A DNA stretch of 64,000 nt from Lytechinus pictus (GCF_037042905.1 NC_087252.1:38068001-38132000); one strand, 5' to 3'; positions 25,194 to 62,077 are shown, counted from the stretch's first letter. The notes: generated by a model not told the origin, from the sequence alone. A program made the numbers and translations.

Positions 25194-25673
25194 TCATTTA
25201 GGAATGGGAATACGGCTTTCGTATAGCACTTCACCGCCATGATGTCCAACTGATGAAACGGTTGGTTTGGAGCCCTTCCGGTCCGTGCTCGCAGAGGAGT
25301 GGTACTTCTCGAGGGGCTTCATGGCCATGTAGGTGTGTGGTTCCCGGGTATCCCTAGAGCATGAAGAGATTGCTTGAGTGGTGCCCGTTGTTATGTTCGA
25401 TAGGATGAAGGGATCTGTTTGGCCAGTATGACCTGATGATAGACGGTTCTGGGAGGTCAAGCATGTGTTGGCTTCCCGCGAAGCGCTAGAGATTCCATGG
25501 ATGGTACTTGAGGATGTGTTCAAGGCCATCGAAGGGAAGAGCTGACCAGTATGAGACGATGGTATACCCTCATTCAAGGTCATGTATGTGTGACGCACAG
25601 TAGATCCATGCACATTGGAATCACTAGGAATTGCGTATGTGGGGTCCGATCTGTCAAATTCCACAGCTGAAGA
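25194..25673 (-). CDS. IgSF receptor terminal exon: cytoplasmic tail with tyrosine motifs
   Basis: Acceptor ttcttgaacag|TCT (phase 0), open to TGA at 25194. Motifs TYAIP, TYMTL, TYMAM, VLYES. Confidence 0.75.
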   Translation of the reverse strand, partial: SSAVEFDRSDPTYAIPSDSNVHGSTVRHTYMTLNEGIPSSHTGQLFPSMALNTSSSTIHGISSASREANTCLTSQNRLSSGHTGQTDPFILSNITTGTTQAISSCSRDTREPHTYMAMKPLEKYHSSASTDRKGSKPTVSSVGHHGGEVLYESRIPIPK

Positions 25674-26222
25674 CTGTTCAAGAACAGGGATACAAAAAGA
25701 TCACAATATTATGAGCGATTATTCACTAAACAACCAAGCACTAACATTTGTTTTTTAACATGTTCAAGATGATCCATTTTATTTTCATTTCAAACCTCTT
25801 GCATCACCTTACACTCAGTACAGTCTACAGGGGAAACGGATTAATTATACATACTTGATTACAATCTTTACGACAAATCATTTGGAAAATATATTCATGT
25901 CTCCTTTGTCATCTCCCACGCTTTTCCCATTTTGAAAATTCGAAAATACAATGAGCATGCTAATTATGAAACTGCAATTCAGTGTTAAAAAAAGTTGCAG
26001 AATATAGGTGTTACATGGTGAAAAACATTGCTTCAACTATACTCTGGTCTTATAATATTCCCAATTTTTTTCACTTCCAGTACCTTAGATAATAGAGTGC
26101 TCTGTTCGTCATTTCAGACAACACGCAATGAAATTATCCAGTTAAATTTTAATTTGTTAAAAGGAAAACATGTTCATGATCAGGATACTTCATAAGAACT
26201 ACGATTTATCTATCTTATTTAC

Positions 26223-26308
26223 CCTCGCTCCCCGTGCTGATACCTGCTCAGCACTGCCGTCGTTCCGGGAAATGCCGGAACTCTGGATTCCCGCTGATTC
26301 TAATCCAC
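26223..26308 (-). CDS. IgSF receptor juxtamembrane cytoplasmic exon (alternative donor would end it at 26244)
   Basis: Acceptor ttttttgtag|GT (phase 1), GGLESAGIQSSGISRNDGSAEQVSARGAR, donor AGG|GTAAAT (phase 0) matching the next exon. Confidence 0.7.
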
Positions 26309-26448
26309 CTACAAAAAAACAAACAATAATATTCATGTCCACATGCCATTACAGTTAACACTTTCTTGATTTTTCAAAAATGGTGTTGTATGCTCATGAA
26401 TGTATGTGGAAATGCCATAATAAATAGGGTGAATAAAATAAATCCTAC

Positions 26449-26565
26449 CTCTTTTCTTCCTCAATAGAAGATAGACAAAGGCTGCAAATACGATCAAGAG
26501 AAAGCCAGATGGAACTACTGCGTAGGCAATCGAGATTCGATGACAATGGCATGGTGTAGAAGCTC
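26449..26565 (-). CDS. IgSF receptor transmembrane exon
   Basis: tttttattgtag|...G|GTAGGA, 117 nt, phase 1-1: GASTPCHCHRISIAYAVVPSGFLLIVFAAFVYLLLRKKR (hydrophobic helix plus basic stop-transfer). Confidence 0.88.
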
Positions 26566-26789
26566 CTACAATAAAAATGACAGTGTATCAAAGTAGAATA
26601 AGCATTATCTACTCATCCCATTTCTGCACTCTAAAAACAGTTGGGCAAAAAATGCCTAATTTTAACCAACCCTGGGCAACATATTGTCCACAAAATTATT
26701 GGTTAAAATCTGTCCAAATTGGGTAATAAAAAACTAATAATCGGGTAGTAAATTTGTTCATTTGGATAACAATTGACTAGAATAAATTC

Positions 26790-26855
<66 letters not shown>

Positions 26856-27384
26856 TACGGACATACATTACCCAACACAGTGGACAGGATGTTGCCCAAA
26901 ATGTTAAATGTGTGCACTATCACGCTATTTTCTGAAAATTCGAAAAATATATATTTGTATTTTGTATTGTAAGAAGTCATTAGGCCTACTAACTCACAAT
27001 TTATATCTTTTTTTTTACCCGAAGAGTAAAAACGAACAAACAAAAACAATTAGCAAATGCATTGCATTCTGGCGATATAACGAATTACATCAACATGATG
27101 AATAAAACTTAATGGGGAATCGACTACAATAACACTATTTTGACCTGCTATTCAGTCACCCACTGACAGTAATTGTCATATCTGCTGCACATATCTATTA
27201 AGTTAAGTGAATGATAATTTGCCGTAAAAAAAAACAAAAACAAAGTAAAAGAAACGCGCTTGAAGAAAATATCCCAGAAGGATAATTAATTTCCACAGTT
27301 TTTTTTATACAGTTTTGTATTTTCGACGCCCCCTTATCTTCTAACAGTATGCAGTTATAATATAGGTGTTACTGATACTTTTAC

Positions 27385-27429
27385 CTTCAGTGAAATCGTC
27401 GGAGAATGTAGCCAGAGCATCCTCGCTAC
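27385..27429 (-). CDS. IgSF receptor 45-nt stalk exon
   Basis: ttttacag|GT...GAA G|GTAAAA, phase 1-1, SSEDALATFSDDFTE. Confidence 0.7.
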
Positions 27430-27687
27430 CTGTAAAATGCCAACGAAATCATCACTTTCATGTAAAATATTACATCAAATAATAAAAGGTAAACAAATGA
27501 GCGTGATCAGAATTTAGTACGGAAAATACACCAACAGCAATATGAGCATCTTCTTATAACGAAACAACGATACACCCGGTGAAAACGAAAGAATATGGAA
27601 TGAATTGTATTGTTATTGCTTAATTTATCAAAAAATACAAAATGTTATGAATCAGTTTATTAGATGAAATGATCATTGGCAAATTAC

Positions 27688-27762
27688 TTTCAAATCTTCC
27701 ATAATCCGTTCGCAAAGTTTGAGTGGTGTTTGCCCAGCGATCGTCAATAACGGTAGTGTGTC
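27688..27762 (-). CDS. IgSF receptor 75-nt stalk exon
   Basis: tttatacag|GA...GAA A|GTAATT, phase 1-1, GHTTVIDDRWANTTQTLRTDYGRFE. Confidence 0.7.
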
Positions 27763-28613
27763 CTGTATAAATTGAATTAAGAAAATGGAAATTAGTATGA
27801 GAGTTTGGTTAATAAATGTCCCCCAATATGCCAGTACCTGAAAAAAATTGCCAAAACAAACTAATCCTCAAAATACGCTTATCAATGGTTATTGGTATAA
27901 ACCCGTGATTGTGTAAATCACGTACAGTGTCAGACCAGGTTCATACATGACGAGTGTATGCAATTTGACACAGCTCTATTGACTAGTAGGATCCATCCCT
28001 ATACCGATGCAAAGGCACCTCTGTGTTCCTCTCCTTTCTCAATAGAACCCTCTCCCCTCACATCTGTACACACACACACACGCCCACTCTCTCACCCCAG
28101 CACACTCACAGACACACACATAAACTCACTCACACAGACCAATAGCTCTCCTATCTATCAACGCGTACATGCAATCATTAATTGATTTAACCCCCCCCCC
28201 AAAAAAAAAAAAAATAATAATAATAATTATATATATATATATATATATATAAATATACAAGAAGGAACATGAGAGAGAGAAAGCACACACACACACACAC
28301 TCATGCGCAAAAAGCCCAGTTGAGGATTTTTGTGGGTCAACTTTTCAAATCATAAATTGGATAGCTACGAGCTCTTTTTCCGTTCAAAATGGAAGGGATT
28401 TTAAGATGTAACAAGAAAAGATGGAAAACAATAAAATAATATGATTATGCAACTCGTAGCCAAAATATATAGGTTTTATTTAAAATAGAGAAGAAATATT
28501 GATTGAATAAGCCTTTAATAATTCTGAAGACAATATCCTGTTTGAAGAATTGATGATGAGTACGAAATGATGTAACATATATTTTATGACATGGAAAGAC
28601 AACTGACACTCAC

Positions 28614-28958
28614 CTCCATAGTTTATAAAGATGGATGCGAAAATACTTTGTGATGAGGAAGAAATGTTTGGCGTTCTGCAGATAATAATTTCTTGACGTT
28701 GAATATCAGGTACAGTAAATTGTAATGTCCTTGTAGGCACAACAAGACGTCTTTCACTTTCATCCTGGACAATTTGGTAAGAATCCGCATGAACAATAAT
28801 CCCGTCAGATAGTGTCCATTCCAAATCGACCGCTGGTTTAACAGGATTGGTTTTACAAACTATCGTCCTGTTTCCTGCCGGGTTAACTGGAAGTGATCCG
28901 TGGTTATCTATTCTCACATCTCCATCTTTATCGTACAATGTTAAGGCCTTCGGTGGAA
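28614..28958 (-). CDS. IgSF receptor constant-type (CD80-like C2/C1-like) Ig domain exon
   Basis: tttcatttcaag|TT CCA CCG...G|GTGAGT, 345 nt, phase 1-1: VPPKALTL...IVCKTNPVKPAVDLEW...RTLQF...IIC, with canonical Cys-Trp-Cys. Confidence 0.88.
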
Positions 28959-30396
28959 CTTGAAATGAAAACGAGATATATCCATTTATGCACTGGTAAA
29001 ACCCCCATTATCAGAATGCAGATCAATTTTGTTGATTGATTAACATTATATATGCCACTGTTTTCATTTTATTTTTTTATTTTTTTTATTTTTTTTGCTT
29101 TTGTTTGTTTGTTTGTTTTCTTTTTTTTTGGAGGGGGTTGATCCGTAGCCGTCTGTTGTGGTAATTACATGATTAAATTTTCATTCCACATCCCGCTTGT
29201 TTACTGAAAAGCATAATAACGGCTTGGTTTTCTCTTTCCAGTTAGTATTATCAGACTATGATAAATTTATATTTAAATTGCTGTACTGATATGGAAAGCG
29301 TTCTGAAACGTTTCAAGCCTTAGACAATTACTAGAACATCGTGCATTATGTCCGATGGGTCCATTCTCAATTTTAACACCTGACGTTTTTTTTGTGGAAA
29401 ACAATATTTCTAGGGTTTCTTCTTTTTCCCACTGTTAATGCATTTTTTTAATGAACATATATTGACCCTTCCATATATCTTGATAAATACCTAAGATTGG
29501 GAAATATTGTCAACCAACCAACATATCGTATACTATTATTAAACATCATCACAAACTCATAAAAAAATATCATGGTTTTAATCATTTCACAGCATGGTTA
29601 ACTAGTTCCTTCATGTTAAGTAACCACAAGGCTGCATGAGGATTTCTTTAAATTAAATTGGATTATCTAACACTGGAAGGAATCCCTCATATCATTATAT
29701 CGGAGGAATGCGACATAGACAGTCGATTACTAAGTTCTGCCATCATGACTGGAAGTAGACCAAAAGCTTCGGTCTCTGTTATGTTGGTTGTTCCGCTGAA
29801 CTCCGTTTGCTCCACTCACCAAATACAGAGACCGAAGTTCTAACTCGATCTGTACAGGGACTCAATGGCCATATGTTTATGTATTAAGTTTGGATCAACC
29901 AGGGAAGTGGGAGTTGCGCAAACAGCCGAAGTAAGTCACTGTTTTTCCTTTTAAGTTGATTTTTTTCCAATTTTGGTGCATTTCAGGCCAAAACGGACTA
30001 ATCATTATTTTGGTCCAGTTCTTTTTATATATTTTATGAAATAAAGACAAAAATCGATGAGCCCCGTCGGGGGGGGGGGGGGGTGGGATTTTGCATTGTT
30101 TACCCCTTAACGGTGGCTGCACGATAGCTAACCGTCTATGTACGAGTAGAAATAAAGAAAACAAATAAAATGTTTTAAAAAACTCCTCGAAACAGACGGC
30201 TGCCAGCTGTCTAGACTGGAAGGAGCATCCGAAGAAATTAATATTGTACGTGATGTCAAAATCTATAATTTTCTTCCGTCTGTTTTCGTAATAACGTGAA
30301 TGTCCTGCCCTATATAGATGAACATATACACTGACTAGGGTAAAAATCAAAATTTGATAGTGTATGGCATAAATTCCATGTAAAAATATTAAATAC

Positions 30397-30702
30397 CGTT
30401 CACTGTCAGGTTGATTTTACAAGTCTGTATGTCGTTATGATATAAAATATCGGAAATGTATTCATCTTCATCAGCCAACGAAACGTTACGAATAGTCAAA
30501 GTGCTGATAACCGTTTCGTTTCTTTCAAGTGTGTGTCTTGTAGAGTTGTTTTCACATGGAAAACTTATTTCGTTGCATGTGAATATCAAGGAGCCATTAC
30601 TTCGCCACCATATTATCGCCACGCTTTGGTCGATTGCACCGGACCCAACGCAGACTTACTTCATGTCTTCAACTACATTTTGGTAAACGGGGCATCATTT
30701 CA
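30397..30702 (-). pseudogene. V-type Ig exon copy 1 (proximal), disrupted
   Basis: 306 nt, phase 1-1, donor AAC G|GTATTT. C...IIWWR...STLTIRNVSLADEDEYIS...INLTVN. Two in-frame stops near the 5' end; F-strand Cys replaced by Ser. Confidence 0.8.
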
Positions 30703-32926
30703 CTTAATAGGAAGCGGAATAGTAGGGGGTAATACATCATGAGAACAGATGTTCATGAACTAAGCAAATTTAAGAATAGTATCTTTTGATCGAAAATCGG
30801 GGGGGGGGGGAGGCACTTGACCCCCTCAGAATAATAATAATAGTGATGATCAGAATAATAACAACACAAACAACAATACTTATATTAAGGTAATGGTAAA
30901 TGGAAAATGAATAAATGGAATGAAATCAATGGACAGATAAATATAAAATGCTAATAACAATAATAAAAAAAAATCCTGTGCCCTATTTGGGATATCTCAC
31001 TGGGCCGGCAACTAATTCGTTAATAATTTGCAATTTCAGGTTTGGGTAGTTATTAAGACGTCTCCGAGATATTTCCTCTACATTACGGAATCTCCAAGGA
31101 GTCGCAAGAAAACCAATCTGCTCGATTTTTGTATACTTTTCCAGCTTTTTCGCGATGTCTCCACGACGTCTCCAAAACATCTCCATCAGTTGCAGAGACG
31201 TCGAGTAGATACACCCCGGCTGCTCAGACGACTCCATGATGTCTTTGCGAAGTCTCAGAGACCAATACTGACGAGAGGAGGTACTTTAAGCTCTACACAC
31301 TGCCCTACTTTGGCATGAGGAAGCTAATTACAAATTATGATTTGTTGTAAACGAGCAATGTGTGTTCGTCATTTCCGAAGGCGTCAATGCAATTTAACAG
31401 CATACTTTCTTCAATATCATACCACAGAACGATCATATCTTCACCAAATTTTGCCTGAACGTGCAACATACAATGGGTGTTTCAGAAACAGCAATAACTC
31501 AAATTTGACTGATGTCACTTGCTTCCTTTCGCCAAAATTGTGTAGCACAGTTAAACGCAGTTTGAAATTTTATACAACGCTGTTTACTACATGTACCATG
31601 CAGTAGTTGTTTAACGGTTTAAACAACAAAGCTTAATTTATTGAAGATTAAATATAAGAAAGAAAACTTCAATTGTTTAAGATTTAAAACACTTGCTTAA
31701 ACTGTTTAAACTATATACTACTGTAAGGTTAATTTAGCAAAAAGCGTTGGATAGCCATTTTAAACAGCGTTTTTGCTGTGTATCTCACCAAATGAGACAT
31801 ATCTGTGATGTTTCAGAGTAGAGAGTCGCGGAGATGCCTCCAACAAAAAAAGTTTATCCGCTCTAACCGAGGAGACGTTTTAGCGACGCGTTGCTCCAGA
31901 CAAGGTGAAAACCACTAAATGTCCTAACATTCGCGGGCTGCAAAGTCTCCAAATAGTCATTGCGACATCTCGAAAATCTTGTTTACGTAAAAGCATAATA
32001 ATGATTTGGTTTTCATTTTTGAATAGTATTGTGATAAATTGATTTTTAGATTGCTGTACTTACATGGAAAGCGCTTTGAAACAAGTGTCAAAACTTAGAT
32101 AATCTGTAAAACATCGTGTAATGTGGCAAATTATGGCTCCATTCCAATTTAGTATCTGACATTCGTTTGAAATGCAATATTTGTGTTTTCTTCATTTTTC
32201 TCACTATTTTCTACTTAAAGTGATCAATTTAATAAGTTTCTTCCTAATTGATTTTTTTGTGAACACACCCTGACATATACTTTGCTAATTACCTAAAGAT
32301 TGGGAACTATTGTAAACCAACCAATTGTCCATGCGGTCAGTTGAAATACATGTATCATGGTAAAATTGTAAAATATATCATAGTTAACTTTAAGCAATTA
32401 ACCGTTAACATGGTTAACTAGTTCTTGGCCTTATGGAAGCAGGGGTGATGGGGATGTTATTCACCATTATAGGCAGCAAGGCTCTGGAATTCAAGCAGTT
32501 ATGGTAAAAAAAAATATAGAAATGTAACCAAAATCACATTCTTTTCGTAGTGTTTTTGCTTGTCGAATATATCCAGAGCCAAATCACGTTGATTTTTTGA
32601 TGAAAACCTGGGCTTGTCAAAAATGTTTCTTCAAAACCAGCGCCCTCTATTGAAAGATCATTCGCAGGGCCCTGGGGATGTATAATGAATCGCGAGGAGT
32701 GACGCGACATGGATAGTTTACTACTTAGTTCTGCAATATACGATATGATTTGAGAATGGACCATCCGTTTCACGACGATAAATAATTGTGCGTGATGGCA
32801 AGATCTAAAATTTTCTTCTGATCGTCTCGAAGGTATTATCGTGAATATTCTGAACAATACAGATTAGGATAAGAATGTGATGGTGTGTTATATACGAATG
32901 GATTTCATGTTAAAAATGTTAAATAC

Positions 32927-33111
32927 CGTTCACTTTCAGGCTGATTGTACAAGTATGTATGCCGTCAAAATCATACATATTGCAAATGTATTCATCTTCA
33001 TCAGCCAACGAAACGTTACGAATAGTCAAAGTGCTGATAATCGTTTCGTTTCTTCCAAGTGTGTGTCTTGTAGAGTTGTTTTCACAAGGATAATTTATCT
33101 CGTTGCATGTG
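32927..33111 (-). pseudogene. V-type Ig exon copy 2, 5'-truncated at a LINE junction
   Basis: TCNEINYPCENNSTRHTLGRNETIISTLTIRNVSLADEDEYICNMY...ISLKVN, donor G|GTATTT. Close paralogue of copy 1. Confidence 0.82.
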
Positions 33112-36100
33112 TCAACTTGGTTTTGTTGATGAAAGATCAACTGTCACTAATCGTTGGAAGGTGCTTGATGAGTGCACACACGTACTAGATAAGGGTGGTA
33201 CCATTGATGCCATATACGTGGACCTCATGAAAGCATTTGTTACGGTGTCTCACCAGCGTCTCCTTGTTAAGTTGGAATCCTTTGGTATCTGTGGTAAGCC
33301 CCAAAATGGCTTATGTCTTTCCTAACAGGTTGAAGGCAGCGTGTAGTCGTTGGTGGAAAGGCGTCGTCCTGGGGAGAAGTAACGAGCGGCGTCCGGCAAG
33401 GTAGTGTGTTGGGTCCGACCCTGTTTTTGGTATTTGTCAATGATCTTCCAAATGTTAATTCTGATATTGTAATGTCTGCGGATGATACAATGTTGTATGT
33501 ACGTTCTGATAGTGTTAAAGGTGTCGAACAACTCCAAAGAGATATCTTCCTTCCAGAATAACTGTCTGCAAAGTGGCAGCTACGTTTTCATCCTGATAAA
33601 TGCACCGCCTTAAAGCTAAGGAGAAACGATACAGAAGAGAGGCATGAATCTGGGAAGCGGGGGTGCTGAAGCACCCCGAAGATTTTCCCAGGGGGTGCTG
33701 CGTGTATTATTTTCCATAGGCAGCACCCCCGGAATTCTGGTTGGTGTGTCACATAGGAGAAATGTATGGAAAATGACCAACATCTTGTGTTGAAACCCTT
33801 TTTTGGGCCTATCAAATTTCTTGGCAACAAAAACGACCTTCATCTTGTGAAACCTTTTTGCTTGTCATATTTACATAGGCGGATCCAGGAGGCCCAAGAA
33901 GAAAAGGGGGAAGGCATTTAAAAAAAGAAAAAGAAGGGGAAAGAGAGGAGAAAATAGGAGGATGAAGAAGGGTGAATAAAATAAGGTGAAGGGACGACAT
34001 GGAATATACAATTAAAAAACCTTTCATGTCACTATAAAGTTTTCGCTCGCGCTTCGTGTTCACATTGCATGTTTGATGAGATGCATGAGATTCTTCCTCA
34101 ATAGGCTGATATGGAGCTTAAAATATCAAGTTTTGAATTCAATATACAAAACATCTTTCAGCTCCGACATCGAGGTTTTATTATTGTGTTTGATTTATAA
34201 ATTGATTTTCAAAAAGTGCTCTGTAAAATCAATGTCCATCTTATTGTCTCAGTGTCAACATTTTCAGCTCATGCTGCGCGCTTGCGCTATTTGATTTGTC
34301 AGGTACCTATTCTCTTTGTGTATTCATTAAAGTTCTCAAAATATCCCTTTTTAGGTTTGACTGTCAAAAGCTATCAGCGAGCGCTGCACGCTCGCATTTT
34401 GATTGATGAGTAATGTATACCTCTATAATTTCCTCTACAGTAATTGGCAATTCTATAACAAACTACTTAAAATCCACTTTTCATGACATCGCGATTTGCG
34501 CTCTCATAAAAAATATATTAACACATGCATCCTATTCATAATTACTAAAGTGCTTAAAATGTCCAGTTTTCAGGAAATAGTATCAACAAATTTCGAGCTG
34601 TCATTAGGCTTATTAGATTAATAAATACAAAAATAACATTTTCATGAATTCCTAATAATTAAATTGTCCTTATTTCAGAATGGAATATCTCGCGCTTAGG
34701 AAGAGAAATAGAAGAAAGTCATTATTTTCATATGATGACAAAAATGTCCTTAGAATGTCCAGGTCCTAGATCAAAATAAAAACAATAAAATATCATCTTG
34801 CGCTTAGCGCTCACATAATTTATTAAGAGCGATCCATAATATACACTTCACAATTTTCCTACATAGCGCTTGAATTAGTGCTTAAATTGACCCTTTTTCA
34901 GATAGGAATATCAAATATTTTCAGCTCACGCTTCGCGATCACATTATTGATTTTCATGATAAAAAATACATTTAGAATGCCCAGATACTAGGTATAAATC
35001 TTAAACACACGCACGCATGTTTATTGAGATACATAGATTGTTCTTTATTTAAAACATACTTAAATTATCTAGTTTCAGACTAAAATGTTCTGTTCGCGCT
35101 TCGCGCTCACATTTTTGATTTAGGATACCCAATTACCCATTATTTTCATGATTACCAAACATGAAGAGAGTGACCCGTTTTTTAGGTCTAAATCTCTTTT
35201 TTCCCCGCTTACGCTTCGCGCTCGCATTGTTTAGTTATATGCCTATCGTGCCAATGATTATAAAATATGCTTAGAATTTCCATTTTCTAGGTTGGAACGT
35301 CAAAATTTGTCAGCTCGCGCTTCGCTTTCGTTTTATTTGATTATTGAATGATTATAGAATATGTATCGATTTATGACTAACTACAAATAGTCCTCAACAA
35401 GTCCCGCTTCGATCAGTTATATACGCATTTTGTTCAGGATCACAAACATTGCCCAGAATGTTCGATTTTAAGGAAAAGATACATGAGATTTCCAAAAAAA
35501 ATAGCTCGCGCTTAGCGCTCGCACTATTTAAATATGGCTTATGGGGTTACTATATTTTCTAAGAATAAAGCAAAGAAGTGACTGTTACGAAGACACAAAC
35601 AGAAATTATCTTTGAGTGGCCGATCGGGGGGAAATGGGTGAATCCCCCCCCCCCCTTATTGGTAAAAGCTGGATCCGCCCCTGAAATTAGGCCTACTTCA
35701 GCACCCCCAGCAAAAAAGTCGTTCCCAGGGCCCTGAAGAGCGGACTCAGTATCGCATGAAGGGAGAGTCGAAACTACTTTACCCTTAAAGAGATTAAAGC
35801 AGAAAAGGACCTTGGCGTACAGATCGACTCGAAGCTGTCTTTCAAAGACCAATTGTGACAAGGAGCATTAAAGGGGAACAAAGTCAAAGGAATCGCTAGA
35901 AAAATACTTTGCTAGTTTAGATACAGTTACAATGTCATATTTGTTTAAAGGTCTTATCAGACCTCTATTAGAGTATGGACAAGCCGCTTGGTCGCCATAT
36001 AAACTAAGTGAACAAAGAAAGTTAGAAAGTGTACAGAGGCGAGCCACAAATATTATTCCAGGTTTTAGAAATATGTCTTATACATAGGGAACGTCTCATG

Positions 36101-36500
36101 AAACTCAAATTGCTAAGTCTTGCTCATCATATGCGAAGGAGAGGCGACATTATTGATGTCTACAAGTATTTGACTGGAATATATGACACACAGCATAACC
36201 TTTTTAATTTGTCGCAGAGGAGGTCTGGAGGTCATAGGTTAAAGTTGGATAAGAAACTTTCTCGGCTTGAAATTAGGAAGTATGTTTTCAGTATAGAGTC
36301 GTATATATGTGGAATAGTCTTCCTGATAATGTAGTTTCAGCTCCTTCAAAAATCGCCTGGATAGACACTGGTCTATAAATTGTACTTGCTTTATGAGCCA
36401 GTGTATCAAGTTCTCAATATCATTGATACTGTACTACAACCAGAGGAGATACTACGATCGATGAACAGGCATCCAAGCCTCCATCATCGTTGACCTACTG
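33112..36500 (+). mobile_element. Degenerate CR1 LINE 3' part, split by an hAT-type insertion
   Basis: IDAIYVDLMKAF.TVSHQRLL, FHPDKC, then after 35743 EKDLGV, RPLLEY, ESVQRRAT, RRRGDII. Confidence 0.8.
33643..35735. mobile_element. Non-autonomous hAT-like element
   Basis: Ends CA...CTGGGAA / TTCCCAGGGCCCTG. 8-bp TSD AAGAGAGG / AAGAGCGG (7/8). Internal CGCGCTTCGCGCTC repeats. Confidence 0.65.
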
Positions 36501-36506
36501 AACAAT

Positions 36507-37085
36507 TCCACCCCAACAAAGTTGATTTGAATAAAAAGAGAAAAATCCAACAAGCATAACACTGAAAATTTCATCAAAATCAGATGTAACGTAAGAAAGT
36601 TATGACATTTTAAAGTTTTGCTTTATTTCACAAAACAGTTATATGCACATCCTGGTCGGTATGCAAATGAGGAAATTGATGACATCATCCACTATTTTTT
36701 ATTATTATTATTATTATATGAAATTATTCTAATTTTCTCTTCATTGACAAGTGAAACAATGATTAATTCCTCCTTGAACATGTGGAATTAGTATTGTTTA
36801 ATACTATATAGTTCAGTCAAGCTGGTCCTTATTGTCCAATCTGTAAAAATATGAAACATTGTATAATTCAAACATTAGAAATAGTGAGGGACATCATTGA
36901 CTGTCTAATTTGCATGTCAATGAGTTGTGCATATCACTGTTTTGTGAGAAATAAACAAAACTTTAAAATGTCATAACTTTCTTTTTTTTTACACCCGATT
37001 TTGATGAAATTGTCAGCGGTATGCCAGTTTAATTTTTCACTATTTGTTCAAATCAACGTTTCTCTGGGGTGGACTTGACCTTTGA
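36507..37085. mobile_element. MITE with long inverted arms
   Basis: CCACCCCA...TTGATTTGAATAAA...AAATTTCATCAAAATC is mirrored by GATTTTGATGAAATT...TTCAAATCAAC...TGGGGTGG. Confidence 0.65.
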
Positions 37086-37104
37086 AGTAAGTATAAAGTA
37101 ATAA

Positions 37105-37781
37105 TTACTACGAGACGTAATTATTTAGATAGTGTAGTAATTTGGTCTTTCCTAGGTAATTCGTTTATTATTTACCAACTTGGCGTTTACCAGCAAAATA
37201 AAACTGTCCTGCCGAGTTCCTAACTGCTACAGTTATTTAACGTAGCGACTCTAATTAATTTAACGTCATGACGTTATTTCGTTGAGCAGTAATTTGAATT
37301 AACGTCGTGAAGAAATTCGAATCACGACGGTACATGATTAGTTAGATAGTTTAGTGATTCGAGTAACGATGCGACGTAATTATTAAGTTAGTGCAATAAT
37401 TCAAATTACGACGCGACATAATTATTTAGGTAGCGTAGTAATTCGGATTTTCATAGGTAATTCGTTTATTATTTACCATCTTGGCGTTTACCAGCAAAAT
37501 AAAACTGTCCTGCCGAGTTCCTAACTGCAACAGTTATTTAACGTAGCGACTCTAATTAATTTAACGTCATGACGTTATTTCGTTGAGCAGTAATTTGAAT
37601 TCACGTCGTGAAGTAATTCGAATCACGACGGGACATGATTAGTTAGGTAGTTTAGTGATTCGAGTAACGATGCGACGTAATTATTTAGGTAGCATAGTAA
37701 TTCGGATTTTCATAGGTAATTTGTTTATTATTTACCAGCTTGGCGTTTACAAGCAAAATAAAACTGTCCTGCCGAGTTCCT
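37105..37781. repeat. Tandem repeat, ~300/260-bp units (about 2.3 copies)
   Basis: TAGGTAATT...AAAACTGTCCTGCCGAGTTCCTA recurs at 37153, 37454 and 37713. Confidence 0.85.
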
Positions 37782-37950
37782 ACGGGAGATACCATAAAGA
37801 GAAACAGAATTACGGCCCGATGTATATCCATGTTTATGACGGTCTTGTGCTTTCATACTGAGGCGTTCTCGAGCTCTATACGACAGACACTCATGTGGTT
37901 CATGAGGCTGCGAAAAATCGTCCCCGATCGACCATGTCAATGGACGGCAA

Positions 37951-38199
37951 GGCCCCGTCTTACAAAGAGCTGCGATTGATCAAATCAATCAGTGTCATGA
38001 TTTTTTCTTTAGGAAGTTTGCTCAAACTCCTTCGAAAATAAAAAGAAGCATACTCAAATGTCAAGAAAACAGTGAATGTATAAATATATATCATTTGTAG
38101 AAAATATTTTGAAGAAACGTGTATTTAAGATGTTGACATTGCTGGCTTTCCATAGTTACGATGTATCGGATCAATCATAACTCTTTGTAAGACGGGGCC
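37951..38199. mobile_element. Short MITE
   Basis: Terminal inverted repeat (TIR) GGCCCCGTCTTACAAAGAG / CTCTTTGTAAGACGGGGCC. Confidence 0.8.
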
Positions 38200-38629
38200 A
38201 AAATCTAACATCCGCGTAGTGGTTGCAAAAAGTCCCTATTATTAGGGAGTTCACGCTTACCGACGTACGGAGGATCCAAGAACAGAGAAACTGTGTTATC
38301 AAATAACCGTCATTACAGAGAACAAAGAAGTTGTAAAATTCCATACAAATATAACAAATAAGTATTTGTCGAGAATTTGGTGAACTAAAATGGCATTTTG
38401 TCCTTGATTTTAGACAAACGATATTTGCAATTTTCCGTCAGCTTTAAAACTCAGGACGATCTCTTGTTGCTGTTCACCAATTTTCAATAATGACATCTGT
38501 TCTTTGTCATTTATTGACGGTCATTCCCAATATATTTACTCAGTCCTTGAATCATTCGTATGTCGCTGAGCTAAAACTCTTTATTATGAATTCGATGATC
38601 ATAATCTCATAAGACGCTCTGATGTATAC

Positions 38630-38948
38630 CGTTGAAAGACACGGCATGTGATTCAAATTTTGTTATAACTCTGAGAGCCTATTAGAAAGAACATTCTAGC
38701 GTAATATTCATTTTCATCAACTAAGGATATGTTCCAGATAGTAAAAGTGGTGATAAACGTATCGTTTCTTCCAAGTGTGTGTATCGTGGTATTGGTGTCA
38801 CAGGAATGAGTCAATGTGTAACTACAGTAAAATAATACAGAGCCATCGCTTTGCCGCCATCTTATCGTCACTGAATGGTCGGTTGCGATGGTCCCAATAC
38901 ATCGCAAATGTACGTCCTCTCCAGCTTGTGCCTCTACATGAGTTCCAT
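38630..38948 (-). pseudogene. V-type Ig exon copy 3
   Basis: Acceptor ttatattaaag|AT GGA; GTHVEAQAGEDVHLRC...IRW...FTIWNISLVDENEYYA. Donor AAC G|GTATAC. Length 319 nt (3n+1), so a frameshift gives an early TGA. Confidence 0.8.
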
Positions 38949-40560
38949 CTTTAATATAAACATAAACATATAATATAAATCACATATTATTATAAACATC
39001 TAAATCTACCTTTCCTACAGAAACTACTCAACTATGTTGGTGTACTCACGCGCGATTTACAAAACACACAAGGCGCGTTTGCCATAATAGTTAAATACAA
39101 TTTTTTGTTGCGAAAAATTTGATTATTTCCTGAAGTTATACATTCGCCTATCAGGTATACTTTTCCCTTTATGTATTATTGATCGGGTATGTAGGGAGGC
39201 CTTTTGATATGGGTTTAGTGACAAAACCAATTTTTTGAAATCTAATCAGGAAGAACGTAGTACATCTCAATACAGTATAATCTTATTTTAAAAATCTGCG
39301 TTTTTTTATAGGGTTGTTTTAGAATTTCGTTGTAACACGTTTTTAGAGCGATTCATTTCACACCCAGGGAACCGTAAGTACAGGCTGGCTTGCCCAGCTA
39401 CCCCACCCCTCCCTCGTTATGTGCCTAACCTTTTGAGGGGGTAGATGTGGCCTATCAGGCAAAATGAAACAAATATATATTGTGAGCGAGCGAAGCGAGC
39501 AAGCAAGCAGAAATTTTGACATTTTTATTATAAAATATGCAAATTTGTCATAGATTTTGACGTGATATTCAAAAAACAATTATCATTCTCTCTTTCCTTT
39601 TCCCTTTTTTTCTTGGTCGGGATTTTATTTATTTATATATATATATATATTTTTTTTTTTTGGGGGGGAAGTGCCCAAGCCCCTCCATCTGTTCACCACC
39701 GCCTCCTTCTCCGTATTACCCTAACCACACGTCTTTAATATTTCCAGTATATCCAAGCAAGAAATTGAAACCCTACTTAGTTCTATTCACACCCATAGTT
39801 GCCTACGAGGGACGAGCATCATTATTGATAACATGGATATTTTCCCTTACACAAATGGCGCAGTTTTATTTGGCATGCCAAACAACAAGATCTTACACCT
39901 GCATGATTCCAATACTGTCTGATTAACTGTATTTCTTCAAGGAAATACTCATTGTGTAAAACACTTTTTCAATCTGAATCAAGTATGCACGGAAAAAAAT
40001 CAAGCAAGTATGATGGGACCACGTAATAGCAGATTGAGATGAAAATAACATCTTTAAATATATCACAGAGAATTTAAATTAAAAATGAGAACAGCAAATC
40101 CTCTTTTCTTACTCTTTTCCTTCTTTTCAAGGATCACAATTTTTTTAATAAACAAAAAAGGAAAGAAAAAATACCAAGGACATGCAAGAGAGAGAGAGAA
40201 AACAAAAATTACAACTGAATTATATCAATCTACATACCACAAAAACATATCCACACTACCAAAAGTATGAAGTAAACAAACTTCATGGTACCACTGTCGC
40301 CCACAGTTAAATATACATGTAGAACAGAGACATCTATTAAATTCCGCTAATTTCTCCAAATCGATATGGTTTGCACACGGTTCGGGTAATGATTATGAAC
40401 GATAGTATTTACTCTAAACTGGTAATAGCAACGAGCTACTTCAACATTATTTTCTAATATTTCACATGCATTACAAACTTAAAAGCTAATAGCGATTGAC
40501 AATTTGAAACTGCTGAAACTGAAACTTTCATATTGAGTGGCTCTTGAAATGTCTATTTAA

Positions 40561-41497
40561 AGGGGAGTCCAACCAAAATAAAAACTTGTTTTTAGAGGAA
40601 AAAGAACAATCAGACAAGTTGATAGGTGCAAGTTTAAACAGTTTTGAACAAGCAATAAGAAAGCTATGAATTTTTAAAAGTTGTAAATATTGATGATCTT
40701 TATCCCCATGGAGACTTCAAACTGGCAGCATACATGGCATAGGTGATGTCATAGTGATGTAAGGCAAGGACTACTCTTCCATGTACTCCAATACATAAAA
40801 TGGCTAAAATGTCATTTTTTTCAAAAGTCTTACTTCAGATTATATTTTTCTTTTATGAGGATATAAAACAATATACTCCCTGGGTTATATTTAGATTGAT
40901 GGCCCAGAGGAATGATACTTATAGGAGAAAACCACAAATCTATGATATCTAAGAACATGACCTTTGTGGGAAATTTGTCCTTGCCCCTTGTCATTATTTA
41001 CATACCCTGTTGCCAATTTGAAACATACATAGTCGTAGGGACATTGGCGGCGGAAGCCGAAAACTTTAGGGGGATCCACCTGAAATTTTGGGATGGACAC
41101 AGGTAAAAGAATTGACAAGCAAAAAAAGAGAAGAAAAAAAAAGGTTATCAATCAACATTTTAGGGGGGACCACAACAATTTTAGGGGGGGGTCCACCTAA
41201 ATTTTAGGGGGGCGTAGGAAACAAAATTGACAAGCAAAAAACAAAAGAAAAAAAAGGTTATCAACCAAAATTTTAGGGGGGACCACCAACATTTTTTGAC
41301 AAGCAAAAAAAGAAAAAGTATCAACAAAAAAATTAGCAGGGACAGGACCCCCCCCCCCTTCCGCTGCATTTGCTTAGGGATCTCAATATCAAAGCAGTCA
41401 TAACTTTTTATTGCTTTTCCTTCAAACTTTCACCATTCTGTTTTATTCATTTTTCTCCTTTCCACATAGCAGTATATGACCAAGGCTGGATTCCCCT
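40561..41497. mobile_element. TTAA-specific MITE (Kolobok-like ends) with nested repeat ~41045-41370
   Basis: TTAA|AGGGGAGTCCA...TGGATTCCCCT|TTAA. Paralogous empty site CTATTTAATCGTATG at ~44032-44046. Confidence 0.8.
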
Positions 41498-42105
41498 TTA
41501 ATCGTATGTTGTTCAAGAATTGCTTGGTTTGGGGAGTTACACTTCTACAAGACCTCATGGATTTATTTATGCAGCTTTCAATGTATTTTTTTACCTTTGT
41601 TTCTTAGTATTTCTTATATTTTGTATTAAGAACATTGTTAATCGTCAATGGAATGCAAATGGAATCGCTTTCAATATAATATTAAGTATTCTTTCAAGAG
41701 CGAAACAACTCGAATTCACTTGTCAATATACAGGCTACGTTACCACCCTGAATAAAAGACCAAAGGATATTTAAGAGATAAATGGAGTGATCAATTTAAT
41801 GTCACAAAAAAGAATAATTCATTATCATCATTTTGTTGAATATTCACTAAAACTTTGCATATAGAAATTAGACGAGTATAAGCAATCGATTGTCCATTAG
41901 TTTTTAAACAAGTGTACAAATAGCATTTTTATTTATTTGAATGCAGGATAAAATAGAATTGTTGATGAAAAACCTTGCTCACGGGCATAGGAGCCGCGGC
42001 CGGGGATCGAGCCCCGGATTGTCCATGTTTAACCAGGCGCCTTAGACCACTATGCCAAGGTATGGGGGTAGATCGATTAAAAAAAGGCCTATAAAATTAT
42101 GTTAC

Positions 42106-42407
42106 CTAAAGTCCTGTTAACGTTTATCAAGTCAGTCTGTCTCTTAGAAAGACAAACGTAACGTCATAATCATCTTCTTCAACTAACGAAATATTTCAGA
42201 TAGTCAAAGTGCTGATAAACGTATCGTTTCTTCCAAGCATATTTCTTGTAGTATTGGTGTCACAGAAATTACTTAACGTGTCACAGTAAAATAACACCAA
42301 TCCATCGCTTCGCCTCCATCTTATCATCAGTACTCTGTCGTTTGCGATGATCCCAATACATCGCAATCGCACGTCTTCACCAGCTTGTGCCTCTACATGA
42401 GTTCCAT
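42106..42407 (-). pseudogene. V-type Ig exon copy 4
   Basis: Same acceptor as copy 3; GTHVEAQAGEDVRLRC...IRW...STLTI*NISLVEEDDY. Premature TGA where copy 3 has TGG. Probable donor TTA G|GTAACA. Confidence 0.8.
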
Positions 42408-43006
42408 CTTTAATATAAACGTAAGCACATAATATGAAAGAACATAGGCCTGTTATCATAAACATCTACAGAAGCTACACAACTATTAAGACTACATGTA
42501 TGTTGCTGTACTCACGCGTGATTGCATACACGCAAGGAGCGCTAAGTTTACCAGATTAGCCAAAATAATCAAATACAAGGTGTGTTTTTTTTCTCGAAAA
42601 ATTGTGATATTTCTTTAAGTTATACATTCGCCTTTCAGGTATATTTTCCTTTTTAAATATTGACACAACTAACTTTTTAAATCTAGACAGGAAGCACGTG
42701 GTAATACACAAAGTGGGTATCGTTTTTTAAAGGGTTGTATAATTTCATGGTAGCACGTTTTAGAACGATTAACACCCAGAAGTCCGTTAATAACACCGAC
42801 CTTCCTTCTTTGTTGGCGTAATAAGCCAAACCTTTTGAGGGCGCTAGATATGGCGTATTGGGCAAACAAAATGGGAGCGAACGAAGCGAGCAAACAAAAC
42901 AGACATTATTATGAAAAAAAAACAATTTTGTAAAATATTTTGGCGTAATATTCAGAAAATGATATCATATGTAATTATTCGCTCTTTTCTTTCCTTTCCC
43001 CTGTTT

Positions 43007-43216
43007 NNNNNNNNNNNNNNNNNNNNNNNNNNNNNNNNNNNNNNNNNNNNNNNNNNNNNNNNNNNNNNNNNNNNNNNNNNNNNNNNNNNNNNNNNNNNNN
43101 NNNNNNNNNNNNNNNNNNNNNNNNNNNNNNNNNNNNNNNNNNNNNNNNNNNNNNNNNNNNNNNNNNNNNNNNNNNNNNNNNNNNNNNNNNNNNNNNNNNN
43201 NNNNNNNNNNNNNNNN
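43007..43216. other. Assembly gap (N run)
   Basis: About 210 N bases. Confidence 1.
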
Positions 43217-45629
43217 TGGGCAAGCGCCCAACTCCCCTTCTGTAGGCCACCGCCCCCTTATCCGTATTACCTCAACCATACGTCTTCCATAAGCTCAGTA
43301 TATCCAACAGGAAATGGAAGCCCATCTTAACACCTATAGTTGCCTACGAGGGACGAGCATCATTATTGATAACGGGACATTTTCCCTTACACAAATGGCG
43401 CAGTTTTCTTTGCCATGCCAAACAACAAGATCTTACACTAGGATGGTTCCAATACTGATTGATTAACTGAATCAAGTATGCATGGAAAAAATCAAGCAAG
43501 CTTGGGATCAATTAAAAGCAGGAAGAGATGAAAATAACATCTTCTTTAAATATATCACAGACAATTTAAAGGAAAAATAAGAACAGCAAATCCTCTTTTC
43601 TTACTCTTTTCCTTCTTTTCAAGGATCACAATGTTTTTTTCAATAAACAGAAAAGGAAAAAAAAACAAGGACATGCAAGAGAGAGAGAAAAAAATCACAA
43701 CTTAATTATATTAATCTACATACCACAAGAACACATCCAAACTACCAAAAGAATGAAGTAAACAAACATCATGGTGCAACTGTCGCCTCACATTTACATA
43801 TAGCACAGAGACATCGAATTCTGCTAAATTTCTCCAAATTGATATGGTTTGCACACGGTTTCGGGTAATTATTATGAACGATAGTATTTACTCTAAACTG
43901 GTAATAGCAACGAGCTACTTCAACATTATTTTCAAATAGTTCACGTGCATTATAAACGTAGAAGCTAAGAGCGATAGATAATTTGAAACTGCTGAAACCG
44001 AAACTTTCATATTGAGTGGCTCTTAAAATAGCTATTTAATCGTATGATTCTCAATAATAGTTTGGTTTAAGGTATTGTGGGAGATACGCTTGTACAAGGC
44101 CTCCTGGATCTTTTTCATGCAGCTCCCAATGCAATTTTATTTATTTATTTTTTTTTAAAATACTTTTTGTTACTATTTTTCATATTTTATATCAGGTATA
44201 TTGTTAATCGTTCATGATGTGCAAATGTAATCACATTTGATAAAACATAAAATATTTATCCACGAGCGAAACAGCTCTAATTAACTTATCAATCTAAATG
44301 AGGTGATCAATATAATGGCACAAAATAAAATAATTGTGTAATTTCGTTGAAAACATAAAAATATTGGTATGCGAATATTCAATAAAGCTTTGCATATAAA
44401 AATATAAAATTAAGTATATATGCCAGACAAGAAGTATAAGCAATCGATTGTCCAAGGTTTTGCCCAAGTGCACACGTAGTTTTTAAGAATGTGTATAGAA
44501 TGTCCATTTCTTTGGATGCAGGATAAAAGAGCATTGCCAAGTAAATGCCTTGATCACGGGCATAAGTGCCGCGGCCGGGAATCGAACCCCGGATTTTCAA
44601 TGAATAGTCAGGTGCATTAGACCACTCGGCCAAGTCATGAGAGTACATCGATCTATAAAAAAGGGCCTTTAAAATTATATCACCGAAAGTCCTGTTAAAG
44701 TTTATCAAATATTCGATCAAACTTCAAGAGGATTAATGTGGAGTTCGAAGACGGAATAGAACGACGACTTCGAAGATGGCCGGTTACGACGAAGAACAGG
44801 TATGCCGATGATCGACGAAGACGAGGAACGAGTATGGGACGATAAAGACACGGCTGACATCATGGGTGAGAACACGCGTGTCATTGAAGAGTGATGAGCC
44901 AGAGTTAAGTTGAAGTTTTAGCATAAACTATAGGAAGAATGACGGTCGAATTTGATGAACAGTACGTAATTCACTGACTGAAATGCGAGTCATTCCCCTT
45001 GAACGACCTTGTGACTCATGACCTTGACATAGAGGTTAGGCCCGATGCTGACCTACGTTGCCTCTACGCTGACCATAGGTGCCTTTAACTTGACCCCAGC
45101 TTGACAGTCGTCTAAAATAAGAATAGACAAAACACTTAACGGCAAAGCCCTAACACTATTCTATTCACTAGAACTATATCAGCTTATCTAAAATTAGCTT
45201 TCATACTCATTAAACAAGTAAATAAACAACAAGTTTCTTACAACATAAGCTCTATGATAATCAAGAAAATATATAACAGTTGAGAAATTTCGCGCATTTA
45301 TATATCTCTTAAATATAGATCCAATCTATACCTTCAAATCTAACAGACTTGAAAAGGCGAGGTGGGGGCGGGGGGGGGGGGTGTGGCAGTGAGACGCGTT
45401 TCAAACGAGCATTGGTGTATAATATGTTATGCTTTCGTTATCATTTCACTTCATTCTTTGCAAAATAAACGCAACATTTACATACTTTCGATGAACGAAT
45501 ACGATTTGATAACACAAAATTGAACGCCCTCTCAGTTCGTATGATGTAACTTACACAATCGATGGCTCTCGCACACTTCATTGACCAGGCCCGTTTCAAA
45601 TAAATCGAACCTCCTATTGTAAGTTTCCG

Positions 45630-61715: not shown

Positions 61716-62077
61716 GAAATATAGTAACAGCGAGATTATAGGCATAAGTAAAAGTAAAAGTCTCACCAGAGTAGATGACAATTAGTGTGAAGACATAAAT
61801 CCTATTCCTATCTCTGCAGAAAATACAATGTTCCAGAGTAGAGGGATCCAATAAGTTTTCACAATGATGGAGTAAATCTACTAATCACTGTAATGTATAA
61901 AGTATCCACTGAAGTATATGCACAGTCACGGAGTATCCAATGATGCACGAAGTAGAGTGATTCCACAAAGTATCCAAAGTGATGAAGGGAGACAGCTACT
62001 AAAACATCCAAAATAATCACGATGAAGGGAGAAAATTATAAATGACCAGCAAGAAAACACTGTAGAACACTGTAGAA

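What the first reader, a model, noticed from the sequence alone, without database searches (positions are those of the whole stretch)
25194..44710. Tandem array of V-type Ig exons upstream of a single constant-TM-signalling module
Seen: five V-exon copies in two subfamilies lie on the same strand (30397-30702 and 32927-33111; 38630-38948, 42106-42407 and a 3' tip at ~44684-44709). Their probable donors are phase 1 in the G-strand frame, so each could join the one C-type exon (G|TT CCA CCG = VPP). Only the V cassettes are duplicated; no second C, TM or tail exon is visible. Copies differ most around the C-C'' and F-G regions. Established: variable-cassette/shared-constant layouts underlie clustered protocadherins, Dscam and antigen-receptor loci. 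Inference: an invertebrate V-C-TM-Tyr receptor that diversifies, or once diversified, its ligand-binding domain by alternative V choice or V birth-and-death.
Basis: partly seen in the sequence, partly recalled or inferred. Interest (0 to 1): 0.8.

Follow-up and report, generated by a model that had tools for sequence, protein, structure and literature searches.

The report
Broken duplicate V exons, urchin receptor
This sea-urchin gene for a nectin-like surface receptor carries four copies of its outer antibody-like exon, made by piecemeal DNA duplication, but every copy is broken or incomplete, so it is a decaying locus and not a working system for swapping binding domains.

Summary
The repeated V-type Ig exons are real. 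Four copies lie on the minus strand (V30, V32, V38, V42; blastn E 1e-20 to 1e-82), upstream of single C2-set, TM and Tyr-rich tail exons.

The array comes from segmental duplication, and no copy is usable in this assembly:
- V42 is a 3'-truncated copy with an in-frame TGA.
- V32 is only the 3' half, next to a LINE fragment.
- V30 has in-frame TAA and TGA codons before its B-strand Cys.
- V38 is 319 nt (3n+1), so its body is out of frame with its donor.
- The "fifth copy" at 44658-44708 is most likely the start of the duplicated 3.4-kb segment, not a V remnant.

Related Lytechinus loci each have one leader and one V for each C2-TM-tail set. Their annotated mRNAs sometimes skip or truncate the V exon.

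Leader38+C2+TM+tail still forms an open 326-aa frame. I read this as a decaying or V-less member of an uncharacterised sea-urchin IgSF family, with no evidence for alternative V choice.

The N gap lies in an intron and its flanks are collinear with the sister unit. No RNA or DNA runs were listed. The scan found a similar truncated leader+V array elsewhere in this genome (s1-313783).

The parts
25194..25666 (-). Cytoplasmic tail exon, about 157 codons up to the stop. The phase-1 acceptor is cttcag|CT GTG GAA. Tyr motifs are PTYAIP, HTYMTL, HTYMAM and VLYESR.
   Evidence: The frame is open and the acceptor is in phase with the TM donor. The H-x-Y-M-x-M-K-P motif and the STV-x-H-x-Y...SHTG motif are shared with Lytechinus paralogs P0012 and P0023.
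26449..26565 (-). Transmembrane exon of 117 nt, phase 1-1, encoding ...ISIAYAVVPSGFLLIVFAAFVYLLLRKKR.
   Evidence: Found by a hydrophobicity scan. The splice sites are ttattgtag|GA and AGAG|gtagga.
28614..28958 (-). Single C2-set Ig exon of 345 nt, phase 1-1. It keeps the family invariants VCKT, VDLEW and IICR.
   Evidence: Pfam C2-set_2 matches only weakly. The atlas features score 0.96 to CD80-like C2-set clusters. It is 38-45% identical to the C2 exons of Lytechinus genes. There is no second copy in the window.
30397..30702 (-). V30, the C2-proximal V exon. It has the family-typical G strand TCKINLTVN and the donor AACG|gtattt. It also carries an in-frame TAA two codons before the B-strand Cys and a TGA further upstream.
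   Evidence: Translation. Every in-phase acceptor that keeps the A and B strands reads through a stop. The stop sits at the conserved Leu position in the alignment to family V exons.
32927..33111 (-). V32, the 3' half only of a V30-type exon (C' strand to donor). It is 89% identical to V30, and the downstream intron pieces are also duplicated (31978-32324 matches 29196-29521).
   Evidence: It abuts a plus-strand LINE reverse-transcriptase fragment at 33107-33498. No 5' half was found elsewhere.
38630..38948 (-). V38, a leader-linked V exon of 319 nt (3n+1). Its body frame hits a TGA 14 codons after the EYYA motif. The conserved donor AACG|gtatac is in the +1 frame, and the G-strand Cys is lost.
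   Evidence: Pfam ig scores 23.7 bits, above its cutoff.
40238..40286 (-). Leader exon 38, MKFVYFILLVVWICFC plus one nt, with donor G|gtatgt in phase 1 and start context ACCATGA.
   Evidence: It has the same length and phase as the leader exons of paralogs L004 and L005. Leader38+C2+TM+tail gives an open 326-aa frame.
42131..42407 (-). V42, a 3'-truncated copy of the V38 body. It has an in-frame TGA (TI*NISL) and is fused at about 42130-42141 to the start of the duplicated segment.
43724..43772 (-). Leader exon 42, MMFVYFILLVVWMCSC plus one nt, a duplicate of leader 38.
   Evidence: The surrounding segment (43218-44039 versus 39665-40560) is 88-94% identical in ungapped columns.
44035..44708 (-). 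Start of the duplicated 3.4-kb segment, homologous to 41497-42130.
43007..43216 (.). Assembly gap inside the leader42-V42 intron.
   Evidence: The flanks are collinear with the sister unit.
40560..41497 (.). Insertion present only in the V38 unit. It is a repetitive element also found in a Lytechinus pictus paralog locus (85% identity to L002).

Best explanation
The locus is one member of a sea-urchin-restricted family of uncharacterised Ig-superfamily receptors. The family layout is leader, V-set domain, CD80-like C2 domain, TM, and a tail with YxxM/YxxL motifs.

The V region was inflated in three steps:
1. An old duplication gave the V38 and V30 lineages.
2. A tandem duplication of a 3.4-kb segment copied the upstream spacer, the leader exon, the intron and most of the V38 exon. 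It produced leader42 plus the truncated V42.
3. A duplication of the 3' half of V30 with part of its downstream intron produced V32.

All four V copies are now disabled by a stop, a frameshift or truncation. They cannot supply alternative ligand-binding domains.

Inferred: only a V-less message (leader38 spliced to C2-TM-tail, 326 aa) remains open. I think it slightly more likely than not that the gene survives in that form, as annotated for a paralog. Otherwise the whole gene has died recently.
For: - Copies and unit structure.
- The duplication junction coincides within about 10 nt (38679/42141 versus 42130/44708). The segments have no homology outside the unit.
- Lesions: V42 TGA, V30 TAA/TGA, V38 exon length 319 = 3n+1, V32 lacking A-C strands.
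- The V38/V42 exon pair is 80% identical, against 73-94% for the flanking non-coding segments, so the exon is not specially conserved.
- Leader exons are duplicated with the V38 and V42 units.
- Paralog loci hold at most one leader and one V per C2-TM-tail set: L005, L004 and L003 have one V, and L002 shows none within the 10 kb fetched upstream.
- The annotated paralog mRNA P0022 joins the leader directly to C2 over an intact V exon. Isoforms X2, X3 and X5 of LOC135154845 use a donor inside the V exon.
- Leader38+C2+TM+tail is an open 326-aa frame. The V-derived sequence carries 4 lesions in about 359 codons. At that rate about 3.7 lesions would be expected in these 329 codons, and none is seen (Poisson p about 0.025; my arithmetic).
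Against: - There is no transcript evidence at all: no RNA or DNA run was listed.
- No protein among 1.84 billion representatives contains this C2 exon at more than 45% identity. The locus therefore appears not to be annotated as coding, which argues against a living V-less gene.
- The V30 stop is a substitution and the V38 frameshift is a single base in an AAAA run. An assembly error or a null allele in a highly polymorphic species cannot be excluded.
- The V30/V32 differences cluster in the F-G loop (p about 0.003) with 18 nonsynonymous and 2 synonymous changes. This could be a trace of past diversifying selection.
- dN/dS for V38/V42 is 0.45 (p about 0.014 against neutrality), so at least one of that pair was constrained for part of its history.
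Confidence: 0.7

Rival explanations
1. First reader's model. The locus is a working variable-cassette / shared-constant receptor. Different V exons, some with their own leader and promoter, are chosen and spliced to the single C2-TM-tail module.
For: - Several V copies lie on one strand upstream of a single constant module.
- Two cassettes have their own leader exon in a well-conserved segment of 88-94% identity.
- All introns are phase 1.
- V30/V32 differences cluster in the F-G loop.
Against: - No copy gives an open V-C2 frame.
- V42 and V32 are partial because of how they were duplicated.
- The V exons carry acceptors, so downstream copies would be included in the transcript, not skipped.
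- Relatives have at most one V per gene.
Confidence: 0.06
2. The whole locus, including C2, TM and tail, is a recently dead pseudogene. The open downstream exons simply have not yet accumulated stops.
For: - No annotated protein contains this C2 exon.
- No RNA run holds it.
- All V copies are broken.
- The neighbourhood is dense with transposable elements.
Against: - The leader, C2, TM and tail together give 329 codons with intact phase-1 splice sites, no stop and no frameshift.
- The family-invariant residues of the C2 exon are retained.
- The YMxMKP tail motif is retained.
- A V-less annotated paralog mRNA provides a precedent.
Confidence: 0.3
3. The lesions in V30 and/or V38 are assembly errors or belong to one null haplotype. 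The real gene is an ordinary receptor that uses V30 constitutively, or V38 plus V30 in series as a V-V-C2 ectodomain. V42 and V32 are inert by-products.
For: - The V38 break is one base in an AAAA run.
- The rest of V30 (88 codons) and its donor are intact and typical of the family.
- Both exons would be phase 1-1 if repaired.
- The old V38/V30 split shows purifying selection, with dN/dS 0.43 and unalignable introns.
Against: - V30 has two separate in-frame stops in its 5' part, not one.
- V38 has also lost the family's G-strand Cys.
- No annotated protein exists for the locus.
Confidence: 0.12
4. The V38 and V42 units are 3'-truncated copies of a neighbouring whole gene (leader plus V, with C2-TM-tail lost). 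They never were exons of the downstream gene, whose own leader has been lost.
For: - Each unit has its own leader.
- No leader is found for V30 or V32.
- The same genome holds another array of 3'-truncated leader+V copies, according to note s1-313783 (unchecked).
- V38 and V30 flanks share no homology.
Against: - No trace of C2, TM or tail exons lies between V38 and V32.
- By tree path length, V38 and V30 are closer to each other than to any V from another locus, but the tree is unresolved.
- This reading is compatible with most of the best explanation and differs only in the history.
Confidence: 0.3

Closest known systems
Lytechinus pictus LOC135154845, LOC135154843 and LOC135154872, and L. 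variegatus LOC121419900 (all annotated 'uncharacterized protein')
   Same: - The same exon plan: a short phase-1 leader, one V exon ending ...C(K/R)INLTVN G|gt, a C2-set exon starting VP(P/A)K, a TM exon and a Tyr-motif tail.
- The C2 exons are 38-45% identical to the window's, and the V exons 35-45%.
- The tails share the HxYMxMKP motif.
   Different: - Three of those loci hold a single V exon (L004 also a small 3' fragment); none was found in the 10 kb fetched upstream of LOC135154872. The window has four V-derived copies and two leaders.
- All of the window's V copies are damaged.
- The window locus has no annotated protein in the databases searched.
Vertebrate nectin / CD96 / CD226 / CRTAM / TIGIT-type receptors (N-terminal V-set, then C2-set, TM, Tyr-motif tail)
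   Same: - The AlphaFold model of the family's V exon matches CD96 D1, nectin-1 IgV, CD226, TIM-3 and PD-1/PD-L1 V domains, with TM 0.64-0.78.
- The C2 exon resembles CD80-like C2-set domains, and its best PDB sequence hit is CRTAM.
   Different: - Sequence identity is only 12-23%.
- The family lacks the canonical F-strand Cys and has a G-strand Cys instead.
- No orthology was shown.
Clustered protocadherin / UGT1A-type variable-first-exon loci
   Same: Several upstream cassettes, two of them with their own leader, lie on one strand ahead of a single set of constant exons.
   Different: - In those loci each variable unit is one exon with a promoter and only a 5' splice site, and all or most units are intact and conserved.
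- Here the cassettes are leader+V exon pairs, and the V exons have acceptors.
- All copies are broken, two by the duplication process itself.
Hydractinia Alr family of atypical IgSF receptors (PMC9546547; only the abstract shown by the search was read)
   Same: Per that abstract: an invertebrate IgSF gene family whose Ig domains depart from the conserved key residues.
   Different: A different phylum, and no sequence relationship was tested. It is cited only as a conceptual neighbour.

Membership tests
Ig V-set domain | Ig beta-sandwich with extra C' and C'' strands, about 100-110 aa | tested here: met
   The AF2 model of the closest relative's V exon (L001, pLDDT 79) has 8 strands. Its best PDB matches are V domains of CD96, nectin-1, TIM-3, CD226 and PD-1/PD-L1. 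The window copies align to it over their full length. The window copies themselves were not modelled.
Ig V-set domain | Canonical B-F disulfide (Cys in the B strand and the YxC motif in the F strand) and Trp in the C strand | tested here: not met
   The B-strand Cys and C-strand Trp are present. The F-strand Cys is present only in V32 (EYIC). V30, V38, V42 and the relatives lack it and carry a G-strand Cys instead. This is an atypical V-set domain. Pfam V-set scores below its cutoff, while Pfam 'ig' scores above its cutoff for V38.
CD80-like C2-set Ig domain (PF08205) | Profile match above the Pfam gathering score | tested here: not met
   The score is 12.3 bits against a cutoff of 21. Support comes only from language-model features (0.96 to C2-set_2 clusters) and a weak CRTAM hit in the PDB.
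Variable-cassette / shared-constant receptor locus (protocadherin-, UGT1A- or Dscam-like) | Several intact variable exons, each able to splice in frame to the constant exons | tested here: not met
   None of the four copies gives an open frame into C2.
Variable-cassette / shared-constant receptor locus (protocadherin-, UGT1A- or Dscam-like) | Transcripts that join different variable exons to the same constant exon | not testable with these tools
   No sequencing run was listed for the C2 exon or for 25100-31000, so read laying could not be used.
Variable-cassette / shared-constant receptor locus (protocadherin-, UGT1A- or Dscam-like) | The layout is conserved in related loci or species | tested here: not met
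   Of four related Lytechinus loci, three have one V exon per C2-TM-tail set and one shows none within the fetched flank. A true ortholog could not be fetched.
Sea-urchin uncharacterised V-C2-TM-Tyr receptor family (LOC135154845-like) | Shared exon plan and phases, conserved C2 residues (VCKT, VDLEW, VC.V), V-exon end CxINLTVNG, and the tail motif HxYMxMKP | tested here: met

The most novel reading that the evidence does not exclude
The array is a very recently extinguished leader+V cassette system, or one that is still segregating. In some haplotypes, transcription from alternative leaders would attach different V domains, diversified in their F-G loops, to one C2-TM-YxxM signalling module. 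That would be an invertebrate receptor diversified by promoter and exon choice.
Probability: 0.06. Interest if true: 0.75.

Novelty: new member of a known kind. Interest (0 to 1): 0.25.

Why it matters
As found, the array illustrates how partial segmental duplications scatter Ig pseudo-exons and can mimic a variable/constant receptor locus. That is a useful caution for scans of invertebrate immune-type genes.

The gene family itself is of modest interest. It is restricted to sea urchins among the hits. It combines a nectin/CD96-like V domain that lacks the canonical F-strand cysteine, a C2 domain, and a tail with a conserved YMxM motif. All members are annotated only as uncharacterised.

The family also shows a repeated tendency to skip, truncate or lose the V domain. 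That could be followed up as a question about V-less IgSF receptors.

Tried and rejected
Steps that led nowhere:
- Sequencing runs. Neither the C2 exon (RNA) nor 25100-31000 (any kind) returned a run. Read laying could therefore not be used, and neither splicing nor the lesions could be checked in reads.
- Annotated product or ortholog. A HMMER search of 1.84 billion representatives with the C2 exon found nothing above 45% identity. This left no ortholog for dN/dS on C2, TM and tail.
- Locus look-ups. Exact look-ups of P0006 and P0020 failed. The locus was reached through isoform X1 instead.
- Remnants of C2, TM or tail exons between the V copies. None was found at tblastn E<=10.
- The missing 5' half of V32 beyond the LINE fragment. 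Not found.
- A leader exon for V30 or V32. None was found.
- Trees of the V and C2 domains. They were unresolved.
- Literature. One full-text search found no paper on this family.

Ideas considered and rejected:
- An in-frame 'MFMITGLCSFILCAYVYIK' precedes V42. I rejected it as a signal peptide fused to the exon. It is the translated T-rich polypyrimidine tract, a 7-nt indel disrupts it in V38, and a proper separate leader exon exists.
- I first read V42 and 'V44' as sharing a TGATAA lesion that predated their duplication. I dropped this once the segment turned out to be non-exonic.


Full report
**Observation**

The gene lies on the minus strand. blastn of each proposed V exon against the window confirms four related copies:
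- V30 and V32 are 89% identical over 210 nt.
- V38 and V42 are 80% identical over about 330 nt.
- The two subfamilies are 70-80% identical to each other (E 1e-20).
- A 51-nt stretch at 44658-44708 matches only the sequence just 3' of V42.

tblastn with the C2, TM and tail peptides finds no second copy of any of them, even at E<=10. Exon borders were fixed by anchor strings:

| Exon | Coordinates | Note |
|---|---|---|
| C2 | 28958-28614 | 345 nt |
| TM | 26565-26449 | 117 nt |
| tail | 25666-25194 | acceptor cttcag\|CT GTG |

All introns are phase 1. The tail acceptor is the second AG, not the first.

**Assembly gap**

The N run at 43007-43216 lies between two segments of the upstream duplicated unit. 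Its flanks align collinearly to about 39665 and about 39620 of the sister unit, where only about 44 nt separate them. The gap is intronic, no exon or frame crosses it, and nothing suggests a hidden V exon. I did not try to fill it.

**How the array arose**

Self-comparison shows that 44708-42141 repeats 42130-38679, segment by segment. The first pair of segments to be transcribed is 44708-44035 and 42130-41497.

The V38-V42 homology ends at 38679/42141, and the V42-'V44' homology begins at 42130/44708. The two ends meet within about 10 nt.
- Nothing downstream of V38 resembles the segment that starts at 42130.
- Nothing upstream of 44708 resembles a V body or its upstream intron.
- The 3' tip and donor of V38 resemble those of V30 and V32 (AACG|GTAT). 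Those of V42 do not.

The simplest reading is one tandem duplication of a 3.4-kb segment whose junction falls in the F-G part of the V exon. V42 is therefore a 3'-truncated copy, and the 'fifth V tip' is the first 50 nt of the duplicated segment. A three-unit array with a lost V44 body is not excluded. It would, however, need extra events and would leave the coincidence of the two homology ends unexplained.

- 40286-40238, MKFVYFILLVVWICFC, donor G|gtatgt.
- 43772-43724, MMFVYFILLVVWMCSC, same donor.

Both have the same length and phase as the leader exons of the paralogs.

The V38 unit later received a repetitive element at 40560-41497, which is also present in an L. pictus paralog locus.

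V32 is a copy of the 3' half of V30 plus pieces of its downstream intron. It ends against a plus-strand LINE fragment, and its 5' half is nowhere in the window.

**State of the copies**

- V42 has a TGA where V38 has Trp (TI*NISL), and it lacks the G strand and donor.
- V30 has the family-typical G strand and donor. It also has a TAA two codons before the B-strand Cys, at a conserved Leu position, and a TGA further 5'. Every in-phase acceptor that retains the A and B strands reads through a stop. The only open alternative has a purine-rich acceptor and would remove those strands.
- V38 is 319 nt (3n+1). Its body frame ends in a TGA, while its conserved donor lies in the +1 frame. The break is equivalent to one base near an AAAA run, and the G-strand Cys of the family is gone.
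- V32 lacks the A-C strands.

In this assembly no V copy can therefore be joined to C2 in an open frame.

**Selection tests**

- The V38/V42 exon pair (80% identity) is not better conserved than its non-coding flanks (73-94% in ungapped columns).
- dN/dS is 0.45 for V38/V42 (p about 0.014 against 1), 0.43 for V38/V30, and 2.4 for V30/V32 (2 synonymous and 18 nonsynonymous changes, not significant).
- The older V38/V30 split retains exon similarity while the introns are unalignable. Both lineages were therefore once constrained.
- The V30/V32 differences are clustered: 11 of 20 fall in a 33-nt F-G window (permutation p about 0.003). This could be a relic of diversifying selection or a gene-conversion patch, and I could not decide between the two.

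**What the gene is**

Pfam 'ig' passes its cutoff for V38. An AlphaFold model of the closest relative's V exon (pLDDT 79) matches the V domains of CD96, nectin-1, CD226, TIM-3 and PD-1/PD-L1. The C2 exon looks like a CD80-type C2-set domain.

A HMMER search of 1.84 billion protein representatives with the C2 exon returned only 19 hits. The relevant ones, at 42-45% identity, are uncharacterised proteins of Lytechinus pictus and L. variegatus plus one anonymous contig. Earlier notes of this scan name the genome as L. pictus. I did not verify that independently.

The tails share HxYMxMKP and STVxHxY...SHTG motifs. YMxM fits the known YxxM class of SH2 docking sites. That assignment rests on general knowledge and was not tested.

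**Related loci**

| Locus | Gene | Layout |
|---|---|---|
| L005 | LOC135154845 | one leader, one V, one C2 |
| L004 | LOC135154843 | one leader, one intact V, a small 3' V fragment, one C2 |
| L003 | L. variegatus gene | one V, then C2 |
| L002 | LOC135154872 | no V within 10 kb upstream |

No related locus holds more than one complete V, so the multi-V array is peculiar to this locus.

The annotated mRNA of LOC135154843 splices the leader directly to C2 over the intact V exon. Three of the five annotated isoforms of LOC135154845 (X2, X3, X5) use a donor inside the V exon and lose the F and G strands.

**Interpretation**

The array is a by-product of piecemeal segmental duplication in a locus whose V exons are decaying. 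It is not a device for V choice.

Leader38+C2+TM+tail remains a clean 326-aa frame. The V-derived sequence carries 4 lesions in about 359 codons. At that rate about 3.7 lesions would be expected in these 329 codons, and none is seen (p about 0.025). I therefore lean slightly towards survival as a V-less receptor. Against this, the locus appears unannotated and no RNA run was listed, so a recently dead gene is almost as likely.

Sequencing or allelic artefacts in V30 or V38 cannot be excluded without reads.

**Relation to earlier scan notes**

The scan already met a similar picture elsewhere in this genome. Note s1-313783 describes nine leader+IgV cassettes judged to be 3'-truncated gene copies. 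I did not check that note. It agrees in kind with what I find here.

Noticed in passing
window 39665-40560 versus 43218-44039: The segment that carries the leader exon, with about 270 nt upstream and 570 nt of intron, is 88-94% identical between the two units. The V exon is only 80% identical and the other flanks 73-77%. This could reflect gene conversion or constraint on a promoter/leader region. It is unexplained.
   Followed up: partly
window 30397-30580 versus 32927-33110: Eleven of the 20 differences between V30 and V32 fall in one 33-nt window that encodes the F-G (CDR3-like) loop (permutation p about 0.003). Eighteen of the 20 differences are nonsynonymous. This could be a relic of diversifying selection or a conversion patch.
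   Followed up: partly
L004:13075-13347 and L004:13496-13579 (L. pictus LOC135154843): The annotated mRNA joins the leader directly to C2 and skips an apparently intact V exon. A partial copy of the V 3' end (EYDLSMIYHQDIAECKTILTVNG) lies 150 nt downstream. Partial V duplications therefore recur in this family.
   Followed up: partly
L005:10786-11085 (L. pictus LOC135154845): Isoforms X2, X3 and X5 use an internal phase-1 donor (GAAG|GTGAAT) inside the V exon. The resulting V domain lacks its F and G strands. X1 and X4 use the full exon.
   Followed up: partly
window 56101-61781, minus strand: An apparently intact Ty3/Gypsy-type retrotransposon. It has a gag-like ORF of 400 aa and a pol ORF of 1446 aa. 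The C-terminus of pol carries a proline-rich tandem repeat (EGQLPIPPRR and similar).
   Followed up: no
window 739-4224, minus strand: An intact 1161-aa LINE ORF (endonuclease plus reverse transcriptase) with an N-terminal hydrophobic leader and a DVSSNPGP 2A-like motif. Other first-stage notes already flagged it (s1-322142, s1-322228).
   Followed up: no
window 33107-36060, plus strand: A 5'-truncated LINE fragment (reverse-transcriptase pieces at 33274-33498 and 35896-36057) with a 2.4-kb interruption. It abuts the truncated end of V32.
   Followed up: partly
window 37103-37782: A tandem repeat with a period of about 300 nt and 85-91% identity, in the intron between V38 and V32.
   Followed up: no
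window 11197-11621: A minisatellite that translates as repeated (T/I)NLRNYEP.FVFGL-like units in two frames. Its nature is unknown.
   Followed up: no
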